DNA of 63,325 nt, filler included, from Platydemus manokwari (Eukaryota), in assembly GCA_037951405.1 (NCBI GenBank). It is 6 parts of 6 records of this genome, joined end to end, with 100 filler letters (N's around TTAATTAATTAA, not from the genome) between each part and the next. Parts side by side here need not be neighbours in the genome. Positions count along the whole stretch, not along the records: positions 1 to 12,831 come from JBBMOY011949160.1; 5 more parts are not named here. One strand, given 5' to 3'. Below the pieces are notes generated by a model. The model made no database searches. It was not told where the DNA came from and saw nothing but the letters and a program-made list of their open reading frames with translations. The position numbers were made by a program, and so were the translations under genes. Positions 1-9,529 of the stretch are shown piece by piece. The stretch's first letter is position 1, and each line of letters begins with the position of its first letter.

Positions 1-3000
1 TATCTGTCTGACTTTCTGAATCCATTATTAAATGACCAGTTTGACATGAAACTTCATAATCATAATCCAATCTTGGAATTCCAACTTGTAATTTCTTTCC
101 TTTCTTTTCTTTCATTTCTAATATTTCAATGTTCTCATCAATACCATACTGAATGATTTCATCGATCATATCATTAAACTGTAAACCACCTTGCTCTTGT
201 GCATATTTATGTGAAATCATTAGTTTTTCTTCCATTCCTGTTTGTTGCATTTTATTATTCATCAAACTACCAGATTGACATTCTACTTCCATATGTTCAT
301 TCAATTTTGGATATCCCACTTGAATTTTCTTCGATTTTTCAATTCTGTTCAACATTTGACCACTAATCAAAAGATCAGATTGCATTTCTTTATCACAATA
401 TTCGGTTTTCATTGAATATGCACTCACAGCTTCTTCAGATAATACTATATCTTTAACTAGGTCCGTTTCTTCTACATAATCAATATCTGTCTGACTTTCT
501 GAATCCATTATTAAATGACCAGTTTGACATGAAACTTCATAATCATAATCCAATCTTGGATTTCCAACTTGGAGCTTCTTAGCTTTGTTTATGATTCTAA
601 GTTCATTGCCAATTTTGTTAATTAAATCGTATTGTATACTTTCTTCAATCATCTTGTCAAATGTTAAGGCATTTCTTTGTTTTTCATCTCTTTGTATTAT
701 CATTATAGATTCATTGTTTTCGGTTTGTATATTATCGCTTGTCGTAACTCGACCACATTGACATTCAACTTCAAGATAGTCGTTTAGTTTAGGATATCCA
801 ACTTGAACCTTCTTTGATTTATGTATTTTTTCTAACAAAAGATTATCTGTGATTATGATTGATTGAATTTCTTTATCATTATATATTCTTTTCGTTGAAA
901 TTTCACAAGCTTCTTCTTGTGATGCGGCAACATTCATTATGCCATCTGGTTCATATACATAGTCCTCGACTGTCTGTGTTTCAGATTCTTTAACTAAGTG
1001 ACCAGTTTGACAAGAAACCTCATATTCATAATCCAATTTAGGTATTCCTACTTGCACTTTTTTCCCAATTTTGTCTTTGTTTCTTAAACTTTCAATCAGG
1101 TTTTTATTATATTGAATACTCTGCTCGATCATAGCGTCATTATTTAAGGCTTGTTCGTCTTTTCTGCCTTTCATTTCCATCACCATTTTCTCATCAACCT
1201 CTGTTTGAATAGATATGTCGTTTACCAAATTTCCTGATTGGCACTCCACTTCAAGACAATTATTCAATCTTGCATAACCAACTTGAACTTTTTTGGATTT
1301 TTCATTTTTCTTATGTAAATCACTTTCAATCATGAATTCTGACTGCATCTCTCTGTCATAATATTCTCCTTTTGTTGCATATTTATTTAGAGATTCTTCC
1401 AATTTTACAACAATTGCTGTTTCATCCACTTTATTTATATAATCCATATTGGTTTGACTCTCGGAATCCATTACTAAATGTCCAGTTTGGCATGACACTT
1501 CAAAATCATGCTCTAATCTTGAAATTCCTATTTGCACTTTTTTCCCTATTTTTTTAATTTTATTCGTTACCTCGAGGCAAATTTCATTATTATATTGAAT
1601 GACTTCATTAACCATGTCATAGTCTGTTAGAGCTTTTTCTTCACTATTCTGCTTTCTTTCTATGATAATAATTTCGGCAATTTCAGTTTGCATACTCATA
1701 TTATTAACTAATCGTCCAGATTGACATTCTACTTCAAGATCATTATTTAATCTCGGATATCCAACTTGAATTTTTTTTGATTTTACAATAATATTTGTTG
1801 ATTGGTTTTCATTTATCATATCTGATTGAAGTTCTTTCTCGTAATAATGTTTCTTAATACTAGCAATATTTTCATTCATTTCCATCTTATTAAAGGTTTT
1901 CCCTATATCGACATCATTCCAAATATCATCTTCTGTTTGGCTTTTGACTTCTTTTACTAAATGTCCTGTTTGACATGAGACTTCATAATCACAATTTAAT
2001 CTTGGATTACCAACTTGTAATTTTTTCCCCTTATATTCTCTTATTGTTGTAAGTGGAAAAGAATCATCAAGAATATGTTGAATATTTTCTTCTACCATTT
2101 CGTGAAATATTTTAGAATCGTTCAGATTTTGCTTCGTATCTAATGTAATGATTTCATCCGTTTCTATTTGAATCGATACATCTTTTGTCAAGCTACCTGA
2201 CTGACACTGAACCTCAAAATTTTCATTTATTCTGGGATATCCTACCTGGACCTTTTTAGCTTTGTTCTTTTTACTCTGAATTAAACTTGAATCATCAGAG
2301 AGATTTGATTGTATAGCTTTTTCTAAATATTCTACTTTCATGTTTTTAGGTAAATTTTCTTGCTTTTCCACTAACATTTTTGTTATTTCAATGTCTTGGA
2401 TATATTCATCAGCTGTCTGACTTTCACTTTCCTTGACCAAATGTCCCGTCTGACATGAAACTTCGTAATCATAGTTTAGTCTTGAATTTCCAACTTGAAG
2501 TTTTTTCCCTTTATATTCTTTTGTTGATGAAAAGTGTTCTTTTTCATGTGCAGGAGTGTATTGAATGATCTCTTCAAACATCTGATTATTAATCAAAGCA
2601 AACTCTACATTACTTTGCTTTGTTTCTATAACGATTGTTTCATCAGTATCACTTTGAATACCAACGTTATTTTTAAGACTGCCCGACTGGCATTCGACAT
2701 CAAAAATACTGTTCAACCTAGGAAAGCCTACTTGCACTTTTTTCGATTTATTCATTTTACTTGATGATTTAATTGAATCGATGATAAAATCCGATTGTAC
2801 TTCCATTTCTATAAATTCCTTTTTCTTTTCGTATGATGCAGCTACATTATCTTTGTCTATTAAAGTTTGTGAATATTCAATTATTCCTACATTATTTGAA
2901 TCAGTTTGAGATTCAGATTCTCTTATTACGTGACCCGTTTGACAAGAGACATCATAATCATGATCCAATCTTGAGTTGCCTACTTGAAGCTTTTTGGATT

Positions 3001-4560
3001 TTTTACTTTTTCTAATTGAAATCGAAAGTATTTCTTCACTAACATTGTATTGTGTAGTTTCATCAACCATATTTATACAAAGTTGATAAGCTTCTTTATT
3101 ATCGAGTCTTAAATATCTAACATCATTAGTTTGAACTTCATCGTCACCTACAATACAACCTGATTGGCATTCTACATCTAAGCAGTTATTTAACTTCGGA
3201 TAACCAACCTGAAGTTTTTTCGTTTTAGTTAATTTGTTTGATAATATAACGGGTTCACTAAATAAAAATGGTTGTATTTCTTTTTCTGAAAATTCTATTT
3301 TTGGTTTATCATCAACTTCTCGCATTTGTTGTGTAACTAATAAATTTGTCATTTCGGTATCTTCTGTTTGACAACCTAATTCATTTGTTACGTACCCTAT
3401 CTGACAAGATCCCTCTAAATCCATACCAAGCTTTGAACTTCCCGCTTGCATTTTTTTGGACTTGGTTTGCTTTTCATAATTTTGATATGAATATTCTTTG
3501 AAATTATACTGAAACTCGATATCGATCAAATCTTTTTCTCGTAAATCGTAAGCTTTTTCATACTGACTCTTAGTTTCTAAATACTGAATTTTTGTATAAT
3601 AATCGTATTCAGTTTGACAATCGATTTCTCTTACTATATGCCCAGCTTGACAAGAAACATCATAATCAATTGATAATCGACAATTTCCTACTTGTAGTTT
3701 TTTCGATTTTTTATCTTTTAAAGGTGGATGTATATTTTCTGAGTCATTATCCCATTGTACTTCTCCATCTATCATATCTATCACAATCAATTGGTTTTTA
3801 ATTCCTTCGTCCGAAACTTGACTCATTTCCGTTTGGGATGAAGCATCATTAATCAGACACCCACATTGACAAGCGACTTCAAACTTTGTATTTAATTGAG
3901 GAAATCCTACTTGGATTTTTTTGCCTCTTGTCTGCTGTTTTTGAAAATCCTTACCTAAAGGCTGAATTTCTTTTTTGTCTGTTATTCCTCCGTGAGAATC
4001 ATATGAAATTAAACTTAGCCGCTCTTGAAAGTCAGTGTAGTCATTGTCTGTTTGGCATTCCTCCTCAACAACTACTCGACCAGTTTGACATGATGTCTCT
4101 AAATCGAATCCTAATCTTGATTGTCCAACTTGTACCTTCTTGCCTTTTGTTATCACATCACGTTTAATGACTTCATATGATGTCAAATTTGATTGGTTTT
4201 GTTTTTGAATTTCTTCGTTTAATATAAAGCTACTGTCATATTCATCAAATTCTGTTTGAATGGCATCATCGCGTGAAACAATCCCGATTTGACATGATGA
4301 ATCAAATGTGTCAAATATTTTAGAATACCCATATTGGATATTTTTCTCTTTTTGCTCTAATGACGCTAGACCTACTAATTCTGATTGCATTTCCGTTTCT
4401 AACGTTTCGCTCATATTTTTATCAAGAATCTCGTATTGCCACACCTCATTATTGATTGTTTGGTCGATTTGGTCTTTGTAAAAATTATCAGTTTGAACAG
4501 CAATTTGTCTATCTGGATCTAGATGTGCTGTCCCGATTTGTAAACGTTTGTTTTTCGTCA
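1..4560 (-). repeat. Coding tandem repeat: ~20 units of ~80 aa, mostly alternating A/B into a ~160-aa (~480 bp) super-repeat
   Basis: A KKxQVG-type motif recurs near 81, 316, 564, 798, 1047, 1278, 1527, 1761, 2010, 2241, 2490, 2727, 2979, 3204, 3441, 3687, 3907 and 4126, with degenerate copies near 4328 and 4533. All but the last are followed by a CQxG..QT-type segment. Bases 1-88 recur at 484-571. Confidence 0.92.
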
Positions 4561-7500
4561 ATTCTATTGAGTTCATTTCAGTAGAATTATCTTTTATATA
4601 AATCACGGTTTTCATTGGGAGTTCAGATGATAGATTTCTCAATGAATTCAAATTATCTCTCGTAATATCTGTTTGAACGAAATTATCTTTATTTAAAACT
4701 GACATTTGTGTGATGGCATCAAGCTGGAGAGATGATTTTTGAATTCCCTTTGATTTATAGTGAACATTTGTTTGAGTTGTTGTTTCGCTTCGAAGAGTTC
4801 CAATTTGTGTTTGACAATCCCGCTTTAACCGTTTTGATTTTGATGGTTTTGTCTGGATAATTCGATCATTACGCAAAATACTTATCTGTGTCATTACATC
4901 CATTTGTGATTTGGCTGGTGTGAAACTGATATCGGAACTTGTTTGCGTAACTGACGATTCAGTGAAACAACCAATTTGTGTCATACTATCGGCAAATAGT
5001 TTCCTTGGTTTTCTTTTTTGATTGACTATAACTGCTGAACTAGAATCATACGATAATTCGGCTTGGGTGCTACAATCTTTAAACAAAACTCCAATTTGTG
5101 TCTGAGCATCAAGCTGTTGATATTTTGTTCTTGTCATAGATTTTTGTTGCTTCTTGGTTGATGCAAGAGAAGAGTCAGTTGTGGAAAAAATATCATCTTG
5201 AATATACGTAGATTCATCGAACGTCATTGGACTACATTGAATCTGGCTATCTCGTACCCTTACACCGAGCTGAGTTTGTGAATCAACCTTCCATGTTCTC
5301 TTCTTACTTGTTTTATGTGATTTATGCTTGAAATATTGTGTTTCTGCATTGGCTATTGCATCAGGAAGAGAATAACTTTCTTTCATATGTCGATTAAATT
5401 CAAGTCGCGATCCGTCACCGAAATTTTTGGAATTTATTGGATAACGTAGATCAGAAGAACTGTGCCGGCTACTGAATTCATGTTCATGGTGTGAAACCTT
5501 TGTTAAATTGATGTGATCGTGAGAAATATTCGGACTTAATTCCAAATTGTGAATATGTCGTAAATCTAAAGCACTGGAAAAACGATGATAAAGATCATCA
5601 TCAGCTTTATCTGGTGATCGAGAAAAATAAGCGATATCGTCACTATGTCGATTCTTGTAATTTTCAGCCGGTATTGTTTCGAGTCGTCTCAATAAGTTAT
5701 TCAATTCACATTTGTTCTCTGAATTCAATTTGCTGCAAATTGCAATATAAACAAAAAACGATTTGATTAAAACCATTTACTTCAAAGTTTCAATATTATC
5801 GGCATAGCGTTTATCTCGAGTTTCACGGGATATTTCATCTCTATATTGAGTGATATTTTGACTGAACTGAACCGAATCCCGCAAAGATCGCAAATTTTTC
5901 AGGTGGTCCTTAAAGTTTCATTAACATTTTATTATAACAATTTCAGTATTTTTTGTCAGAAAATTCACTAATTCAGAAAATTGACTAATAAAAATCCTAC
6001 TTAGTTACTTGAAATTTTTAAAAACCCTTAATCATTATTCTAAGGATAAAATATAAAAGTTTAATTAAAATTACACATGTTACCAAATTAGAATAAAATC
6101 AAAAAAATTTCAATTATGAAATAATTCTTGTGATTTTACATATACAGATATTTGATAATTTATCTATTATAAATTTTTAATGAAAAACACGAACAATTTT
6201 TCTCAAAATATTCTAGACATTACAAATTAAAAAAAGACTCCTTTTGTGGAAATTCTAAAAACATCTTTATTTGATTTATTGTTACAAAACTTCATTCTTG
6301 AAGGTATTAAGTACATTTGATTTTAAATAATTTAAATAATTTATAATTTCAGTAACATGTGAATGAAGTGCTAGTAATTATGTGGGAAATAATATTATAA
6401 AGAACTTACAATATATTTAATGAGTGGAGTATGCATTTTAACAATTTCATGTTCTTTGTAAAAACGATTTGTTCGTAAATCATCTGGACCTATAAACACA
6501 AACAAATAGAAAATAAGACATTAATTAAAAATAAACTTCTCAAGACAATTTTTTGGCGCAATTCTTTTAACAGAGTCTTTAGCTCATTACTTTTGATATC
6601 ATTCGAATTTGATAGAAGAATTTCCTGGACATCTTTAATCAAAATATTGATTTGTTCAATTTTAGAAACAGCAATTGACTACAGGAAAATATATTGACAC
6701 TTAAGAAAAATGGAACAGTTTTTTCACTTACGGGATCACTGAGAATGTGCTCAAAAAGATTGATGTAATGATCGATTAGTACAATGGAGAATCTGTTCAA
6801 ACATTGCTCCCAATTCTTTATCAATTGATCACAGAGGCTAATTAATTATATATCAAGATATTAAAAATAATTTTAATAAAATAAATAGCTATTAAAATGG
6901 CATTAAATGAAAGAAAATTTTCATGGAATTTCAAATATTATTTCACAAATTATCAATTAAAACCCAAATATGCCTTCTAACTATTCCAGCACATATGATA
7001 CATGGATTATAATTGACCTTAATCATGGTAACATGAAATCTCAAACAGAATAAATAAACACACAAATGCTTGATTAAAATTTACAATTTAATTCAATTTT
7101 AGAAAGGCTTTTCATCTACCATGGATACTTTTGAAATCGATTTCAAATATAATTAATGATTTAAGACAAACATTTTGAATAATCAATAAAAATTAAGACT
7201 AATTAATCAATAAATAGTTGATATTTCACCCTCGTGGCTTTTACTTTGTCGAATACTTGTCTTATTAAGAGATTATAATTTTAATTTGCTGCAAATCTAT
7301 TTATCAGAATGTTAGGAAAAGAAGAATACTTAGCTCTCAGCTATCTCATATTTTTCTGATAGGTATATTTCTGTTAGTATATAATGAATAGCATGCAGAA
7401 TGTAAATGTTAAGTAAATTATGAAAAATTACAAAATTAGTTGGCATTAGAAAATAAAATCCTCGAATAATCAACATTATTTTAAATATATCGAAAAATAT

Positions 7501-9529
7501 TATCTAAAGTTTACCTGCTTAATAATAATCAATAAGTAAAAATGTTATTGCGTCTTAATATTGAAGTCAAAATCTTCACCAGAAATCACAAAATGTATAA
7601 GGAAATATTTTGCATATAACTCAATTTCAAAAAATTAAAAGTTATTTCTATCAAATTCAACTACTTATTAATTGTCAATAAATAAAAAATCTTTAAAAAA
7701 TTTTGCTTAGAAATTTATAAACTAAAAATGTTGAAGATTTTTTAATTTGAAATCTTAATCAATCATTATTCTTCATTACATTTAATTCATACCTGCTCGT
7801 TTTTTCTGTTGATAAAATATCCGGACCTGGAATCCAAATACAAACTGAAGGAACTTCACCTACTTCACCTTTATAATTTTGAATTTTCCACATTTGAGGA
7901 TTAGAATTATTAAGAATTATAACTTCTTCTTGATCTTGAATGGATATTTCTGGGCCTTGAAATGAAATGGGAATTATAATTTCACTTAATAAAGGAAAAA
8001 ATTGAAATTTACTTGTATATGAATATAAACTTTGACCTAGTAATGAATTCTGACTGACAGGATCTTGTCGAAGATGAACTGGAACGATTTTTCTGGATTC
8101 TGTTTTTAAATTGTCTATTCTACTCCATAAATACAGAAAATAAGATTGATGATCCTTTAAAAATGGAATGCCATTAACTTAATTAGGTCAATATAATATT
8201 TCCGAACTTTTAAATAGTTCGTTAATTGATCTGATTCTTTAATTGTTCCCTTTGGTTCAAATGTTAAAATTTGATTCGATATAATTTTCCATCGTTTTTT
8301 CAACAGAGCTGTGACTTCATTCAGATTGTGATGAAACTAATTATCAAGATAATTACTAATTATTCGGTATTCGAATTTACTTGGTGATAATGTGATGCGT
8401 TTCGCAAATGAACTTGTGACAAATGAGCTAGATTAGTAATATAATTCCAACACTCATTCACATTATTTGATATCGGCTAAAATGAATGTTATTAGTTATA
8501 ATTCTTTAATAACCTTACTTTGTTTGTAAGCATTTCATCGGAAAAATTCTGGATCACGCTGTGATGTAATACGCATGCCCCAATATTACTCGTAAGTTCC
8601 TATTATTAAGTTAGTTAGAAATCCATTTTGATAAGATATAAGATAATTTTCACATAATGTTAACATAAAGATTATTTAACATTATATTATGATCATCGAA
8701 GAAACATTTACAACGAAAATAGCTTTAATATTGTCTTATATTGATCAGGTAAATTCGTTATCATAAAGAAATGCACTTAAACAACATGTAATATGTATTC
8801 AAAAATTAAAATTAATATCTCATTGATTTTTCTTAAAGAATTCCAGTATTACTGGGTTAATTGCAAAATTGATAACAATAATATTGTAATATAAAAGTAG
8901 TAACTATAAAAAATTTAAGTTGGTCAGTGATAAATCTATTATGGACTATGTATATTAACATGAGATTTATAAATCGAACTTACAATTGCAAATCGTATAA
9001 ATTGAGAATGATAATTTTTGAAACATTCTTTAAGTAATGATTAAATAATCTTTTATTGTGTAATTTGTTTAAAAATTAATAATAAGATAAAACCAACTGA
9101 ATAGAGTTTTTCTAAATTTGAAATTCCTCCTAAATACTTCAACGCTGATACGTTTGATTCAATTTCGGTCTATGTAAAATAAAAAATATAACTCATTTAG
9201 GACTTAAAGAGATCTAACTTTGATTTCAGCTAGTTGTGCAGCTGTTCTGCTTGTTCTGTCATCCTACAGACTTGATTAAACAAATATACAAAATAATAGT
9301 TGAGTTACTTTAAATTTAAAAGAATTTTCTAATTCTCTCAGTTCTTGCAAAATTATTTGTTGACGATTTTCTTCACCTTTAAGCATCTTTGATGTCACAC
9401 CAATATTTAAAATATTTGATCGATCCTAAGATAAATAATTAATTATTCTATAAATAGCTTTTAAGAAACTTTTACCTTGCAGTCAGCCAATCTGACTCGA
9501 AAATAGTCGAGGTCTATGTCCAGTGCCAT
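1..9529 (-). CDS. Plakin-family protein (partial spectrin repeats + plakin SH3) with a giant C-terminal Gln-motif repeat array; 3' end outside the window, >2360 aa
   Basis: Phase-consistent GT-AG model. Exons: 9529-9476, 9425-9309, 9263-9219, 9169-9098, 8599-8519, 8476-8381, 8336-8208, 8154-8013, 7955-7793, 6837-6732, 6678-6537, 6489-6410, 5908-5781, 5732-<1. The translation has plakin-domain hallmarks: WNYITNLAHLSQVHLRNASHYHQFHH, KIVPVHLR and the SH3 SLYSYTSPEISIQDQEEVIILNNSNPQMWKIQNYKGEVGEVPSVCIWIPGPD. I read the last exon codon by codon and found no stop in ~1910 codons. The start codon is inferred. Confidence 0.88.

What the first reader, a model, noticed from the sequence alone, without database searches (positions are those of the whole stretch)
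1..5732. Mini-plakin with a >1900-aa tail of Gln-anchored motifs: candidate extreme multivalent LC8/dynein-light-chain scaffold
Seen: one open exon spliced to a plakin SH3 head. Each ~80-aa unit carries about four Gln-centred motifs: KKxQVG, VxCQ(T/S)G, DxxxQT(D/E) (e.g. ESETQTV, DSESQTD, DISIQTE) and DKEIQS or EExIQY. With ~20 units plus six upstream dyads, that is roughly 80-90 motifs, and the ORF continues past the window. Established: LC8 (DYNLL) binds TQT-like and GIQVD-like Gln-anchored strands in disordered regions; multivalent partners such as ASCIZ have about a dozen sites; parasitic flatworms have expanded DLC families. Inference: the plakin coiled-coil rod and intermediate-filament-binding tail are replaced by a disordered tail. 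DLC dimers could zip this tail into a stiff, junction-anchored filament, and different motif classes might recruit different DLC paralogues.
Basis: partly seen in the sequence, partly recalled or inferred. Interest (0 to 1): 0.88.

Follow-up and report, generated by a model that had tools for sequence, protein, structure and literature searches.

The report
Flatworm plakin with LC8-motif array
A parasitic-flatworm cell-junction protein (a plakin) has, in place of the usual coiled-coil rod, a disordered stretch thousands of residues long that carries about 70-120 conserved glutamine-centred motifs of the kind bound by dynein light chain LC8; it may therefore be the largest LC8 scaffold yet seen, and a partner for the many light chains these parasites make.

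Summary
The minus strand of 2-5776 is one open frame of 1925 codons. It has an acceptor at 5732, a 48-nt GT-AG intron, and plakin-head exons upstream that include a Pfam SH3_10 exon.

The exon carries 7-8 N-terminal motif dyads. They are followed by 17.5 units that alternate between 83 and 78 residues, each with four invariant Gln motifs.

The gene continues on a second contig (C383111) for 1771 more codons to a stop.

Orthologs exist across Neodermata (flukes, tapeworms, a monogenean). They are uncharacterised and mis-named ("Desmoplakin SH3 domain-containing", "Mucin-4", "Titin").

Motifs, their order and an exact 11-residue Gln-Gln spacing are conserved, while the linkers are not. AlphaFold2 finds no fold. 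A complex model places the TQT motif in the canonical groove of the worm's own LC8 (0.61 against a best control of 0.13).

I read it as a multivalent LC8 (and perhaps Tctex or divergent DLC) scaffold that replaces the plakin rod, at about 55% confidence.

Binding, expression and splicing have no experimental support. No RNA run was found, and only one of the four motif classes was modelled.

The parts
9327..9422 (-). Most upstream plakin-head exon mapped in the window. It aligns to residues 21-52 of the Echinococcus ortholog P0037.
   Evidence: tblastn
9095..9169 (-). Plakin-head exon
   Evidence: tblastn against four orthologs
8244..8596 (-). Three plakin-head exons (about 8495-8596, 8381-8473 and 8244-8336) encoding spectrin-repeat helices
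   Evidence: tblastn, (E down to 1e-26 for the summed HSPs against S. mansoni Smp_073450)
7777..8175 (-). Exon encoding the plakin SH3 domain (Pfam SH3_10)
   Evidence: PF17902 at E=1e-12, 48 bits; 31-38% identity to ortholog heads
6413..6842 (-). Further head exons (about 6735-6842, 6493-6678 and 6413-6463). Support is weak but they are collinear with the orthologs.
   Evidence: tblastn; open segments
5781..5917 (-). Last head exon. It ends with two bases of a split codon before GTAAAT.
   Evidence: Sequence read; junction peptide aligned to orthologs
5733..5780 (-). 48-nt GT..AG intron between the head and the giant exon
   Evidence: The splice is inferred from frame, consensus sites and ortholog collinearity. 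No RNA data are available.
4148..5732 (-). First part of the giant exon. It holds 7-8 dyads of the form D-x-x-T-Q-[ILM]-[GS], then 8 residues, then x-Q-T, with the two Gln exactly 11 residues apart. The dyads are islands of conservation against ortholog P0001.
   Evidence: 68% identity inside motif octamers against 37% outside, p=1e-10
2..4147 (-). Array of 17.5 units alternating 83 and 78 aa. Each unit has KKxQVG, then 15 residues on (S/E)CQ(T/S)G, then 11 residues on xQT(D/E), then 31-37 residues on (I/M)Q(S/Y). The frame is cut by the contig end.
956..1069 (-). 38-residue segment (motif classes 1-3) modelled with the worm's LC8 dimer. Residues 24-33, ending in E-T-Q-T, sit in the LC8 groove, with the Gln next to LC8 residue 63.

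Best explanation
WHAT THE GENE IS. The window holds the 5' two-thirds of a single-copy gene for a giant plakin (at least 4100 aa) of a neodermatan flatworm.
- The N-terminal plakin domain (spectrin repeats plus SH3) is followed directly by an intrinsically disordered array of at least 3600 residues. There is no coiled-coil rod.
- The array consists of short Gln-anchored linear motifs.
- The protein ends, on a second contig, in a conserved RPxHKNKRIQRG element and a reduced plakin (Plectin) repeat.

PROPOSED MECHANISM (inferred).
- Dimers of LC8/DYNLL bind the TQT-like octamers on two parallel chains. This zips the chains into a ladder-like, stiffened duplex.
- The duplex would do what the coiled-coil rod does in other plakins: dimerise the protein in parallel and hold the junction-binding head away from the filament-binding tail.
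- The invariant 11-residue Gln-Gln spacing equals an 8-residue motif plus a 3-residue linker. KANK1 has the same short-linker geometry (3-4 aa), and that work reports rod formation by its LC8 assembly and proposes that the short linkers favour rigidity and cooperativity.
- The KKLQV class may take a different light chain (Tctex-type or a divergent DLC/TAL). Its core is identical to the segment of the worm's own dynein intermediate chain that aligns to the N-terminal part of the intermediate-chain peptide in PDB 2PG1. From my memory of that structure, this is the Tctex-1-binding part.

SHOWN: gene structure, repeat anatomy, motif conservation, lack of a predicted fold, and rule compliance of the motifs.

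INFERRED: binding, stoichiometry, rod formation, and the tissue where it acts.
For: 1. The anchor triads are about 4-fold enriched over shuffles here and 2.3-4.6-fold in the 17 ortholog sequences tested from flukes, tapeworms, a monogenean and the closest relative P0001.
2. Measured against the published LC8 rules and the 79-binder table, 38 octamers in the window have no violation and 13 have only soft ones. A further 19 lie on contig C383111. Some come close to known binders, for example DAITQM/DAITQI against RSP3's DAITQI, and KKVQVG against the GVQV/GIQV anchors of ATMIN, DLGAP1 and nNOS.
3. Motif classes and their order (dyad, then xVQH/xIQS, then KKxQV) persist from the monogenean to the flukes, while linkers change completely in length and composition. 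Motif octamers are 68% identical against 37% for linkers between the window and its closest ortholog. Invariant residues use varied synonymous codons.
4. A Gln-Gln spacing of exactly 11 is the commonest spacing here and in 7 of the 13 ortholog sequences tested: 22 cases in the window, 26-44 in four of the flukes, and at most 1.2 in shuffles. This matches the 3-4-residue linkers of KANK1.
5. AlphaFold2 gives pLDDT 46 / pTM 0.12 for one super-unit with an 18-row alignment, and pLDDT 32 / pTM 0.15 for three super-units. There are no strands and no solenoid. No Pfam, PDB or ESM Atlas relative was found.
6. Complex model of the worm's LC8 x2 with the unit segment x2: ipSAE 0.61 (runs 0.45, 0.61, 0.65) against a best control of 0.13. 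The mark was reached by 51 of 78 solved complexes and 2 of 108 mismatched pairs. The runs agree in at least 78% of their contacts. Partner pLDDT is at least 47. The contacts are those of the canonical groove, with the Gln against residue 63.
7. The genome encodes 4 canonical LC8 genes among at least 49 PF01221 matches, and at least 24 Tctex-1 matches. DLC-domain proteins are the one domain family enriched in the tegument proteomes of all three cestode species studied, and the function of the related TAL proteins is described as largely unknown.
Against: - No binding experiment exists, and there is no RNA or proteomic evidence for this gene in any species in the library searched.
- The complex pass may be recall of solved LC8-TQT complexes. 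The tool says so, and it is not calibrated for peptides or disordered chains.
- Only the canonical class-3 motif was tested.
- Class 1 often has Leu or Phe at position -1 and Ala at +1 in flukes. These are absent from the binder table, and one listed non-binder has Leu at -1.
- Class 2 has Cys at -1, which is also not in the table.
- Tapeworm arrays are dominated by KKLQV plus weak SQT/SQA/TQS anchors with prolines.
- The linkers here are fairly hydrophobic (31% ILVFMWY), and the charge-hydropathy test is only borderline.
- TQT-containing peptides can fail to bind: there are 32 non-binders in the table.
Confidence: 0.55

Rival explanations
1. The array is a scaffold of short linear motifs, but its main ligand is not canonical LC8. 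Candidates are Tctex-type light chains, the divergent tegumental DLC or TAL proteins, or an unrelated partner that recognises KKLQV and Q-x-G.
For: - KKxQ[VA] is the most widely conserved class, including in tapeworms, and it fits LC8 rules least well.
- Its KKLQ[IV] core, followed by EVSC and ETQT in the same order, occurs in the worm's own dynein intermediate chain. The N-terminal half of that segment aligns to the N-terminal part of the 2PG1 peptide, which from memory of that structure is the Tctex-1-binding part.
- There are many DLC and Tctex paralogues.
Against: - The similarity of the intermediate-chain exon to the unit profile is not significant (1.3 bits; 390 of 5000 shuffles reach it).
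- The second motif of each dyad is a textbook TQT site across the family, and it models into the LC8 groove.
Confidence: 0.2
2. The units are not free linear motifs. They assemble into a beta-rich or otherwise ordered polymer, by self-association or on a filament, that single-chain prediction cannot see.
For: - Spacings are fixed at 15 and 11 residues.
- Gly, Cys and hydrophobic positions around the Gln are conserved.
- The linkers are rather hydrophobic, and the charge-hydropathy result is borderline.
- The alignments used for folding were shallow (7-18 rows).
Against: - No strand or solenoid appears even with three super-units.
- In flukes and tapeworms the linkers are Pro-rich (9-13% Pro) and vary in length. 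That does not fit a conserved fold.
- There is no PDB or Pfam relative.
Confidence: 0.1
3. The Lys- and Gln-bearing motifs are transglutaminase cross-linking sites. The protein would then be an envelope precursor, like envoplakin, periplakin or involucrin in the vertebrate cornified envelope.
For: - Plakins are known transglutaminase substrates of the cornified envelope (title and abstract of PMC2132639).
- Every unit pairs conserved Lys-Lys with a conserved Gln.
Against: - The conserved context is the T/V/I/C-Q-T/V triad with Asp at -4, which is specific to LC8-type strands.
- The exact 11-residue spacing has no rationale for cross-linking.
- No transglutaminase evidence was sought or found here.
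Confidence: 0.07
4. Artefact: a non-coding or mis-assembled repeat that happens to be open.
For: The assembly is very fragmented (about 2 million contigs), and no RNA evidence exists.
Against: - 1925 open codons in 30% GC DNA.
- Orthologs exist in more than 15 species, with chromosome-scale gene models.
- Synonymous variation occurs at invariant residues.
Confidence: 0.01

Closest known systems
KANK1 L2 linker with LC8 (bioRxiv 10.1101/2025.07.16.665182)
   Same: A long disordered region of a cortical or junctional adaptor, with many LC8 sites separated by 3-4-residue linkers. LC8 converts it into an extended rod that spans a cellular gap.
   Different: KANK1 has at least 15 mostly non-canonical sites in 220-300 residues. 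Here there are about 70 rule-compatible octamers (118 relaxed anchors) in at least 3600 residues, many of them canonical TQT, arranged in conserved 80-residue units. The host protein is a plakin, and binding is unproven.
ASCIZ/ATMIN, Nup159 and RSP3 (classical multivalent LC8 clients)
   Same: Arrays of TQT octamers in disordered regions. RSP3's site TDAITQIE closely matches the DAITQ[IM] dyads here and in flukes.
   Different: Those clients have 3-10 listed sites per protein in the binder table, and the KANK1 paper describes Nup159's linkers as 4-5 residues. Apart from Nup159, the listed sites are irregularly spaced, 20-49 residues apart. None is a cytolinker.
Plakin family (desmoplakin, envoplakin, periplakin, plectin, BPAG1e)
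   Same: An N-terminal plakin domain with the embedded SH3 (PF17902), and Plectin repeats at the C-terminus of the orthologs.
   Different: There is no coiled-coil rod; the head runs within about 150 residues into the motif array. The tail is reduced to one or two Plectin repeats. No calponin-homology domain was seen in the window.
Light-chain cassette of the dynein intermediate chain (PDB 2PG1: the intermediate-chain peptide with Tctex-1 and LC8)
   Same: A disordered segment in which two different light-chain dimers bind adjacent strands. The worm's own intermediate chain reads KKLQI...EVSC...ETQT, in the same order as motif classes 1-3 of the unit.
   Different: The profile similarity is not significant, the spacing differs by 4 residues, and the cassette is iterated about 30 times here.

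Membership tests
Plakin family | Plakin domain: spectrin repeats with an embedded SH3 (Pfam SH3_10) | tested here: met
   PF17902 at E=1e-12 on exon 7777-8175. The head exons are collinear with ortholog heads.
Plakin family | Central coiled-coil rod (desmoplakin, plectin or periplakin type) | tested here: not met
   The last head exon ends at 5781, and the first motif dyad starts about 150 residues later. AlphaFold2 of the array shows no long confident helices. No dedicated coiled-coil predictor was run.
Plakin family | C-terminal plakin (Plectin) repeats | tested here: inconclusive
   The tail on contig C383111 scores PF00681 at 15.6 bits, E=0.014, below the 20.5 cut-off. Orthologs pass the cut-off: S. 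mansoni 30.2, Clonorchis 26.6, S. haematobium 24.5, E. multilocularis 22.3 bits.
Multivalent LC8 (DYNLL) clients | Octamers with a [TIVS]-Q-[TVCI] anchor that obey the positional rules of Jespersen et al. 2019 | tested here: met
   In the window, 38 octamers have no violation and 13 have soft violations only. Cys at position -1 was allowed by my own extension of the rules.
Multivalent LC8 (DYNLL) clients | Motifs lie in an intrinsically disordered region | tested here: met
   pLDDT 46 and 32, pTM 0.12 and 0.15. Charge-hydropathy is borderline but on the disordered side. The alignments were shallow.
Multivalent LC8 (DYNLL) clients | Physical binding to the LC8 dimer groove | not testable with these tools
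   A model only: ipSAE 0.61 against a best control of 0.13. The mark was reached by 51 of 78 solved complexes and 2 of 108 mismatches. Contact agreement is at least 78% and partner pLDDT at least 47. Only the TQT class was tested.
Multivalent LC8 (DYNLL) clients | Motifs conserved while linkers drift | tested here: met
   68% against 37% identity. The motif classes are shared with flukes, tapeworms and a monogenean.
Dynein intermediate-chain-like Tctex plus LC8 cassette | Sequence similarity of the unit to the light-chain-binding segment of the intermediate chain | tested here: inconclusive
   KKLQ[IV], EVSC and ETQT are shared in the same order, but the profile score is 1.3 bits and 390 of 5000 shuffles reach it.
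Mucins (the public name of some orthologs) | Pro/Thr/Ser-rich secreted tandem repeats | tested here: not met
   The array has 1.5% Pro and 17.7% Asp+Glu, and it sits behind a cytoplasmic plakin head. Signal peptide not tested.

The most novel reading that the evidence does not exclude
Each unit of about 80 residues is an iterated copy or mimic of the light-chain cassette of the dynein intermediate chain. About 30 units (more than 60 in schistosomes) would then recruit alternating Tctex-type, LC8 and parasite-specific DLC/TAL dimers. Together they would build a sub-micrometre hetero-polymeric rod that replaces the plakin coiled coil. The assembly would be the missing structural partner that explains why parasitic flatworms expanded their light chains and concentrate them in the tegument.
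Probability: 0.15. Interest if true: 0.9.

Novelty: new variant of a known kind. Interest (0 to 1): 0.72.

Why it matters
If LC8-family dimers really zip this array, several things follow.
- It would be by far the most multivalent LC8 client known. It has tens to more than a hundred sites, against at least 15 for KANK1 and 10 listed for human ASCIZ/ATMIN.
- It would be a natural example of a coiled-coil rod being replaced in evolution by a disordered chain rigidified by a hub protein.
- It would give a concrete, testable partner for the expanded DLC and TAL proteins. These are abundant in the neodermatan tegument, and the function of the TAL proteins is described as largely unknown.

The family is parasite-wide in the searches made here, and no relative outside Neodermata was found. 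It includes the S. mansoni gene Smp_073450, where RNAi and localisation are feasible. In the paper library searched, no text or checked supplement names Smp_073450, and the listed results of two plakin searches showed no flatworm plakin or plakin-LC8 link.

Tried and rejected
NOTHING FOUND.
- RNA evidence: the look-up of sequencing runs returned only one run. It holds the introns too, so it is DNA and probably the source sample. Splicing and expression therefore could not be checked.
- Tandem Repeats Finder found nothing at the DNA level.
- The ESM Atlas feature search gave no usable hit.
- A PDB profile search of the unit gave only a chance EF-Ts match at E=0.41.
- Pfam GvpH hits on the array have 0-1 significant stretches and are low-complexity noise.
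- Searches for Smp_073450 in full texts and in two single-cell atlas supplements found nothing.

WEAK OR REJECTED.
- Intermediate-chain mimicry was tested with a unit HMM against 5000 shuffles and was not significant. I keep it only as a lead.
- BLASTP of the C-terminal tail against Clonorchis matched only the RPxHKNKRIQRG element.
- A PDB search of the last 81 residues gave only chance hits.
- The antisense + strand ORF at 3886-4167 is a by-product of the coding strand.
- I did not build an LC8 position-specific matrix from the 79 published binders, because that would have meant typing them into a script. I used a short rule set instead.

Full report
WHAT IS THERE. The piece is an entire 12,831-nt contig of a very fragmented, 911-Mb, roughly 30% GC genome. 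On the minus strand, 2-5776 is one open frame of 1925 codons that runs off the contig end.
- Reading the DNA, a polypyrimidine tract and AG place an acceptor at 5732.
- A 48-nt GT..AG intron (5733-5780) joins it, through a split codon, to exon 5781-5917.
- Further upstream, still on the minus strand, exons at about 9422-9327, 9169-9095, 8596-8244, 8175-7777, 6842-6413 and 5917-5781 align in order to the N-terminal heads of orthologs.
- Exon 7777-8175 hits Pfam SH3_10, the plakin SH3, at E=1e-12.
- The conceptual peptide across the 48-nt intron aligns without a break to the Clonorchis, Echinococcus and S. mansoni proteins, with scores of 59-73 against a shuffle maximum of 48-56.
- No RNA run exists for this organism, so the splice rests on sequence and on comparison with orthologs.

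ANATOMY OF THE GIANT EXON. Residues 1 to about 545 contain 7-8 'dyads'. Each dyad is D-x-x-T-Q-[ILM]-[GS], followed exactly 11 residues later by a second Gln in x-Q-T.

From residue 544 onward there are 17.5 units alternating 83 and 78 aa. Each unit holds four motifs:
- class 1, K-x-K-K-x-Q-V-G;
- class 2, 15 residues on, (S/E)-C-Q-(T/S)-G;
- class 3, 11 residues on, x-Q-T-(D/E);
- class 4, 31-37 residues on, D-K-E-(I/M)-Q-S or E-E-x-I-Q-Y.

Eight aligned super-units are only 31-48% identical, yet they have 23 invariant columns, including all eight Gln. Twenty-one of those columns use more than one synonymous codon. The DNA copies are only 66-68% identical, too diverged for Tandem Repeats Finder. 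So the residues themselves are under selection.

THE REST OF THE GENE. Only one other sizeable contig in the genome, C383111, carries the unit, so the gene is single-copy. Its + strand frame (1771 codons) starts inside a unit and shows about 6 increasingly degenerate super-units. It then runs through a non-repeat region with scattered xQT motifs to a stop.
- It shares with fluke orthologs a C-terminal RPxHKNKRIQRG element.
- Its last 71 residues give Pfam Plectin repeat as their only hit, at 15.6 bits, below the 20.5 cut-off.
- The protein is therefore at least about 4100 aa, with an unknown gap between the two contigs.

RELATIVES. A profile of the super-unit, searched against 1.84 billion representative proteins, found 12 proteins. 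Ten of them carry species names, all parasitic flatworms:
- several Schistosoma species, Heterobilharzia, Clonorchis (with Opisthorchis in the same cluster), Dicrocoelium and Fasciola;
- the monogenean Cichlidogyrus;
- P0001, an unnamed close ortholog of 3195 aa, and P0011, an unnamed 314-aa ENA protein that I did not examine further.

A search with the Clonorchis head added Opisthorchis, Echinostoma, Calicophoron, Trichobilharzia, more Schistosoma (including Smp_073450), and the tapeworms Echinococcus and Taenia. Public names are 'Desmoplakin SH3 domain-containing protein', 'hypothetical', 'Mucin-4', 'mucin-like' and 'Titin'.

Gene models in Clonorchis and E. multilocularis, and the one from S. 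mansoni, were each shown here to hold head, array and Plectin-repeat tail in a single protein. No paper text, nor the supplements of two single-cell atlases, mentions Smp_073450. The listed results of two plakin searches showed nothing on flatworm plakins or on plakin-LC8 links.

WHY LINEAR MOTIFS RATHER THAN A DOMAIN.
- AlphaFold2 gives pLDDT 46 and pTM 0.12 with no secondary structure for one super-unit (18-row alignment).
- For three super-units it gives pLDDT 32 and pTM 0.15. The only elements are low-confidence helices in the linker of the 78-aa unit, and these cover the 'IQY' motif.
- Pfam, the PDB and the ESM Atlas give nothing.
- Across species the linkers are unrecognisable. They are acidic and Ile/Asn-rich here, and 9-13% Pro in flukes and tapeworms.
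- Yet the motif classes and their order (dyad, then xVQH or xIQS, then KKxQV) persist.
- Between the window and P0001, identity is 68% inside the -5..+2 octamers around Gln anchors and 37% outside (p=1e-10).
- The Gln-Gln distance of exactly 11 is the commonest spacing here (22 cases), and also in P0001 (33), S. haematobium (44), Clonorchis (33), S. mansoni (26), Trichobilharzia (33) and Calicophoron (19). Shuffles give at most 1.2.

WHY LC8. The published rules are as follows (PMC6607443):
- Gln at position 0;
- mid-sized residues at -1 and +1;
- a polar residue at -4;
- a large residue at -3;
- no bulky residue at -2;
- preferably D, E or P at +2.

I applied these rules, together with the table of 79 binders and 32 non-binders.
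- The window has 38 octamers with no violation and 13 with only soft violations. Contig C383111 adds 11 and 8.
- Class 3 is textbook (SETQTV, DISIQTE).
- The first dyad motif has the hallmark Asp at -4. DAITQM/DAITQI closely matches the RSP3 site TDAITQIE.
- KKVQVG resembles the [GV]-[VI]-Q-V sites of ATMIN, DLGAP1 and nNOS.
- Gly at +2 occurs in two listed binders.
- An 11-residue spacing is an octamer plus a 3-residue linker. KANK1's LC8 assembly, whose linkers are 3-4 residues, forms rods, and its authors propose that such short linkers favour rigidity and cooperativity.
- The genome encodes four canonical LC8 proteins among at least 49 PF01221 matches.

A controlled complex prediction used the worm's LC8 x2 and the 38-residue segment 956-1069 x2.
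- It scored ipSAE 0.61 (runs 0.45, 0.61, 0.65) against a best control of 0.13.
- That mark was reached by 51 of 78 solved complexes and 2 of 108 mismatched pairs.
- The runs agree in at least 78% of their contacts. Partner pLDDT is at least 47.
- Residues H-L-V-K-E-S-E-T-Q-T lie along LC8 residues 59-70, and the Gln lies against residue 63, which is the canonical anchor geometry.
- The tool warns that such a pass can be recall of solved LC8-TQT complexes, and that it is not calibrated for peptides or disordered chains. I take it to show that the motif is a proper look-alike, not that it binds.

WHAT IS WEAK.
- Only class 3 was modelled, because one job was allowed.
- Class 1 is the most widely conserved motif, including in tapeworms. 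But it often has Leu or Phe at -1 and Ala at +1, which are absent from the binder table, and one non-binder has Leu at -1.
- Cys at -1 (class 2) is my own extension of the rules.
- The E-E-x-I-Q-Y form breaks the rules (hydrophobic -4, Tyr at +1) and falls in a predicted helix.
- Tapeworm anchors are weak (SQT, SQA, TQS) and flanked by prolines.
- The charge-hydropathy result is borderline.

A LEAD ON CLASS 1. The worm's own dynein intermediate-chain exon reads ...KKLQISKLNEVSC...ETQT.... Its only PDB match is the intermediate-chain peptide of 2PG1, the Tctex-1/LC8/IC complex (E=0.36). From my memory of that structure, the N-terminal half of that peptide binds Tctex-1 and the C-terminal half binds LC8.
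- KKLQ[IV], EVSC and ETQT occur in the same order in the plakin unit.
- A profile test was not significant (1.3 bits; 390 of 5000 shuffles reach it). This remains a lead, not a finding.
- The genome has at least 24 Tctex-1 matches.

READING. The rod that in other plakins dimerises the molecule and spaces the head from the tail is absent, since the head runs within about 150 residues into the array. I propose that light-chain dimers bridging two parallel chains supply both the dimerisation and the stiffness, giving an extended ladder of possibly hundreds of nanometres (inference).
- Where the protein acts (tegument, hemidesmosome-like junctions) is unknown.
- DLC domains are the only Pfam domain enriched in the tegument proteomes of all three cestodes studied, and the function of the related TAL proteins is called 'largely unknown'. 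This makes the link attractive but unproven.

VERDICT.
- Confidence is about 0.9 that this is a conserved array of Gln-centred linear motifs replacing the rod of a Neodermata-wide plakin.
- Confidence is about 0.55 that LC8-family dimers are its main ligand and zip it into a rod.
- I class it as a new variant of known kinds (a multivalent LC8 client and a plakin).
- It is of high interest because it is directly testable in S. mansoni.

Noticed in passing
G000:C1137118 (L031:1471-1638, minus strand): The worm's own dynein intermediate-chain exon carries KKLQI, EVSC and ETQT, in the same order as motif classes 1-3 of the plakin unit. Its only PDB match is the intermediate-chain peptide of 2PG1 (the Tctex-1/LC8 complex). 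The profile similarity to the unit is not significant.
   Followed up: partly
G000, genome-wide: The light-chain families are large: at least 49 six-frame matches to PF01221, including four intronless canonical LC8 genes (L009-L012), and at least 24 matches to Tctex-1 (PF03645).
   Followed up: partly
G000:C383111 (L008:1-5313, + strand): This contig holds the 3' part of the same gene. It has about 6 degenerate super-units, then a non-repeat region, then a conserved RPxHKNKRIQRG element, then a sub-threshold Plectin repeat and the stop at 5314-5316. The gap to the window contig is of unknown size.
   Followed up: yes
window:104-1549 (minus strand), residues 118-156, 277-312 and 434-481 of the three-super-unit model: The only predicted secondary structure in the array is a low-confidence helix (pLDDT up to about 57) in the linker of each 78-aa unit. 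It covers the E-E-x-I-Q-Y motif and may be a separate interaction or self-association element.
   Followed up: no
window:10827-10998: An assembly gap (a run of N) lies upstream of the mapped head exons. The gene's first exon and start codon were not located. The most upstream mapped exon aligns to residue 21 of the Echinococcus ortholog.
   Followed up: no
Public ortholog records: Orthologs are named 'Mucin-4, variant 3' (S. haematobium), 'mucin-like protein' (S. japonicum) and 'Titin' (Cichlidogyrus). The names probably come from the repetitive TQT-rich sequence. Several Schistosoma models also carry a methyltransferase domain (PF13847) at the N-terminus, which suggests fused gene models.
   Followed up: no
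G000:C621552:14-238 (minus strand): A short stretch on this contig holds a fragment of one unit (E=8e-4). It may come from the gap between the two main contigs.
   Followed up: no
window:3886-4167 (+ strand): A 93-aa ORF antisense to the giant exon. I take it as a by-product of the coding strand's composition, not as a gene.
   Followed up: no
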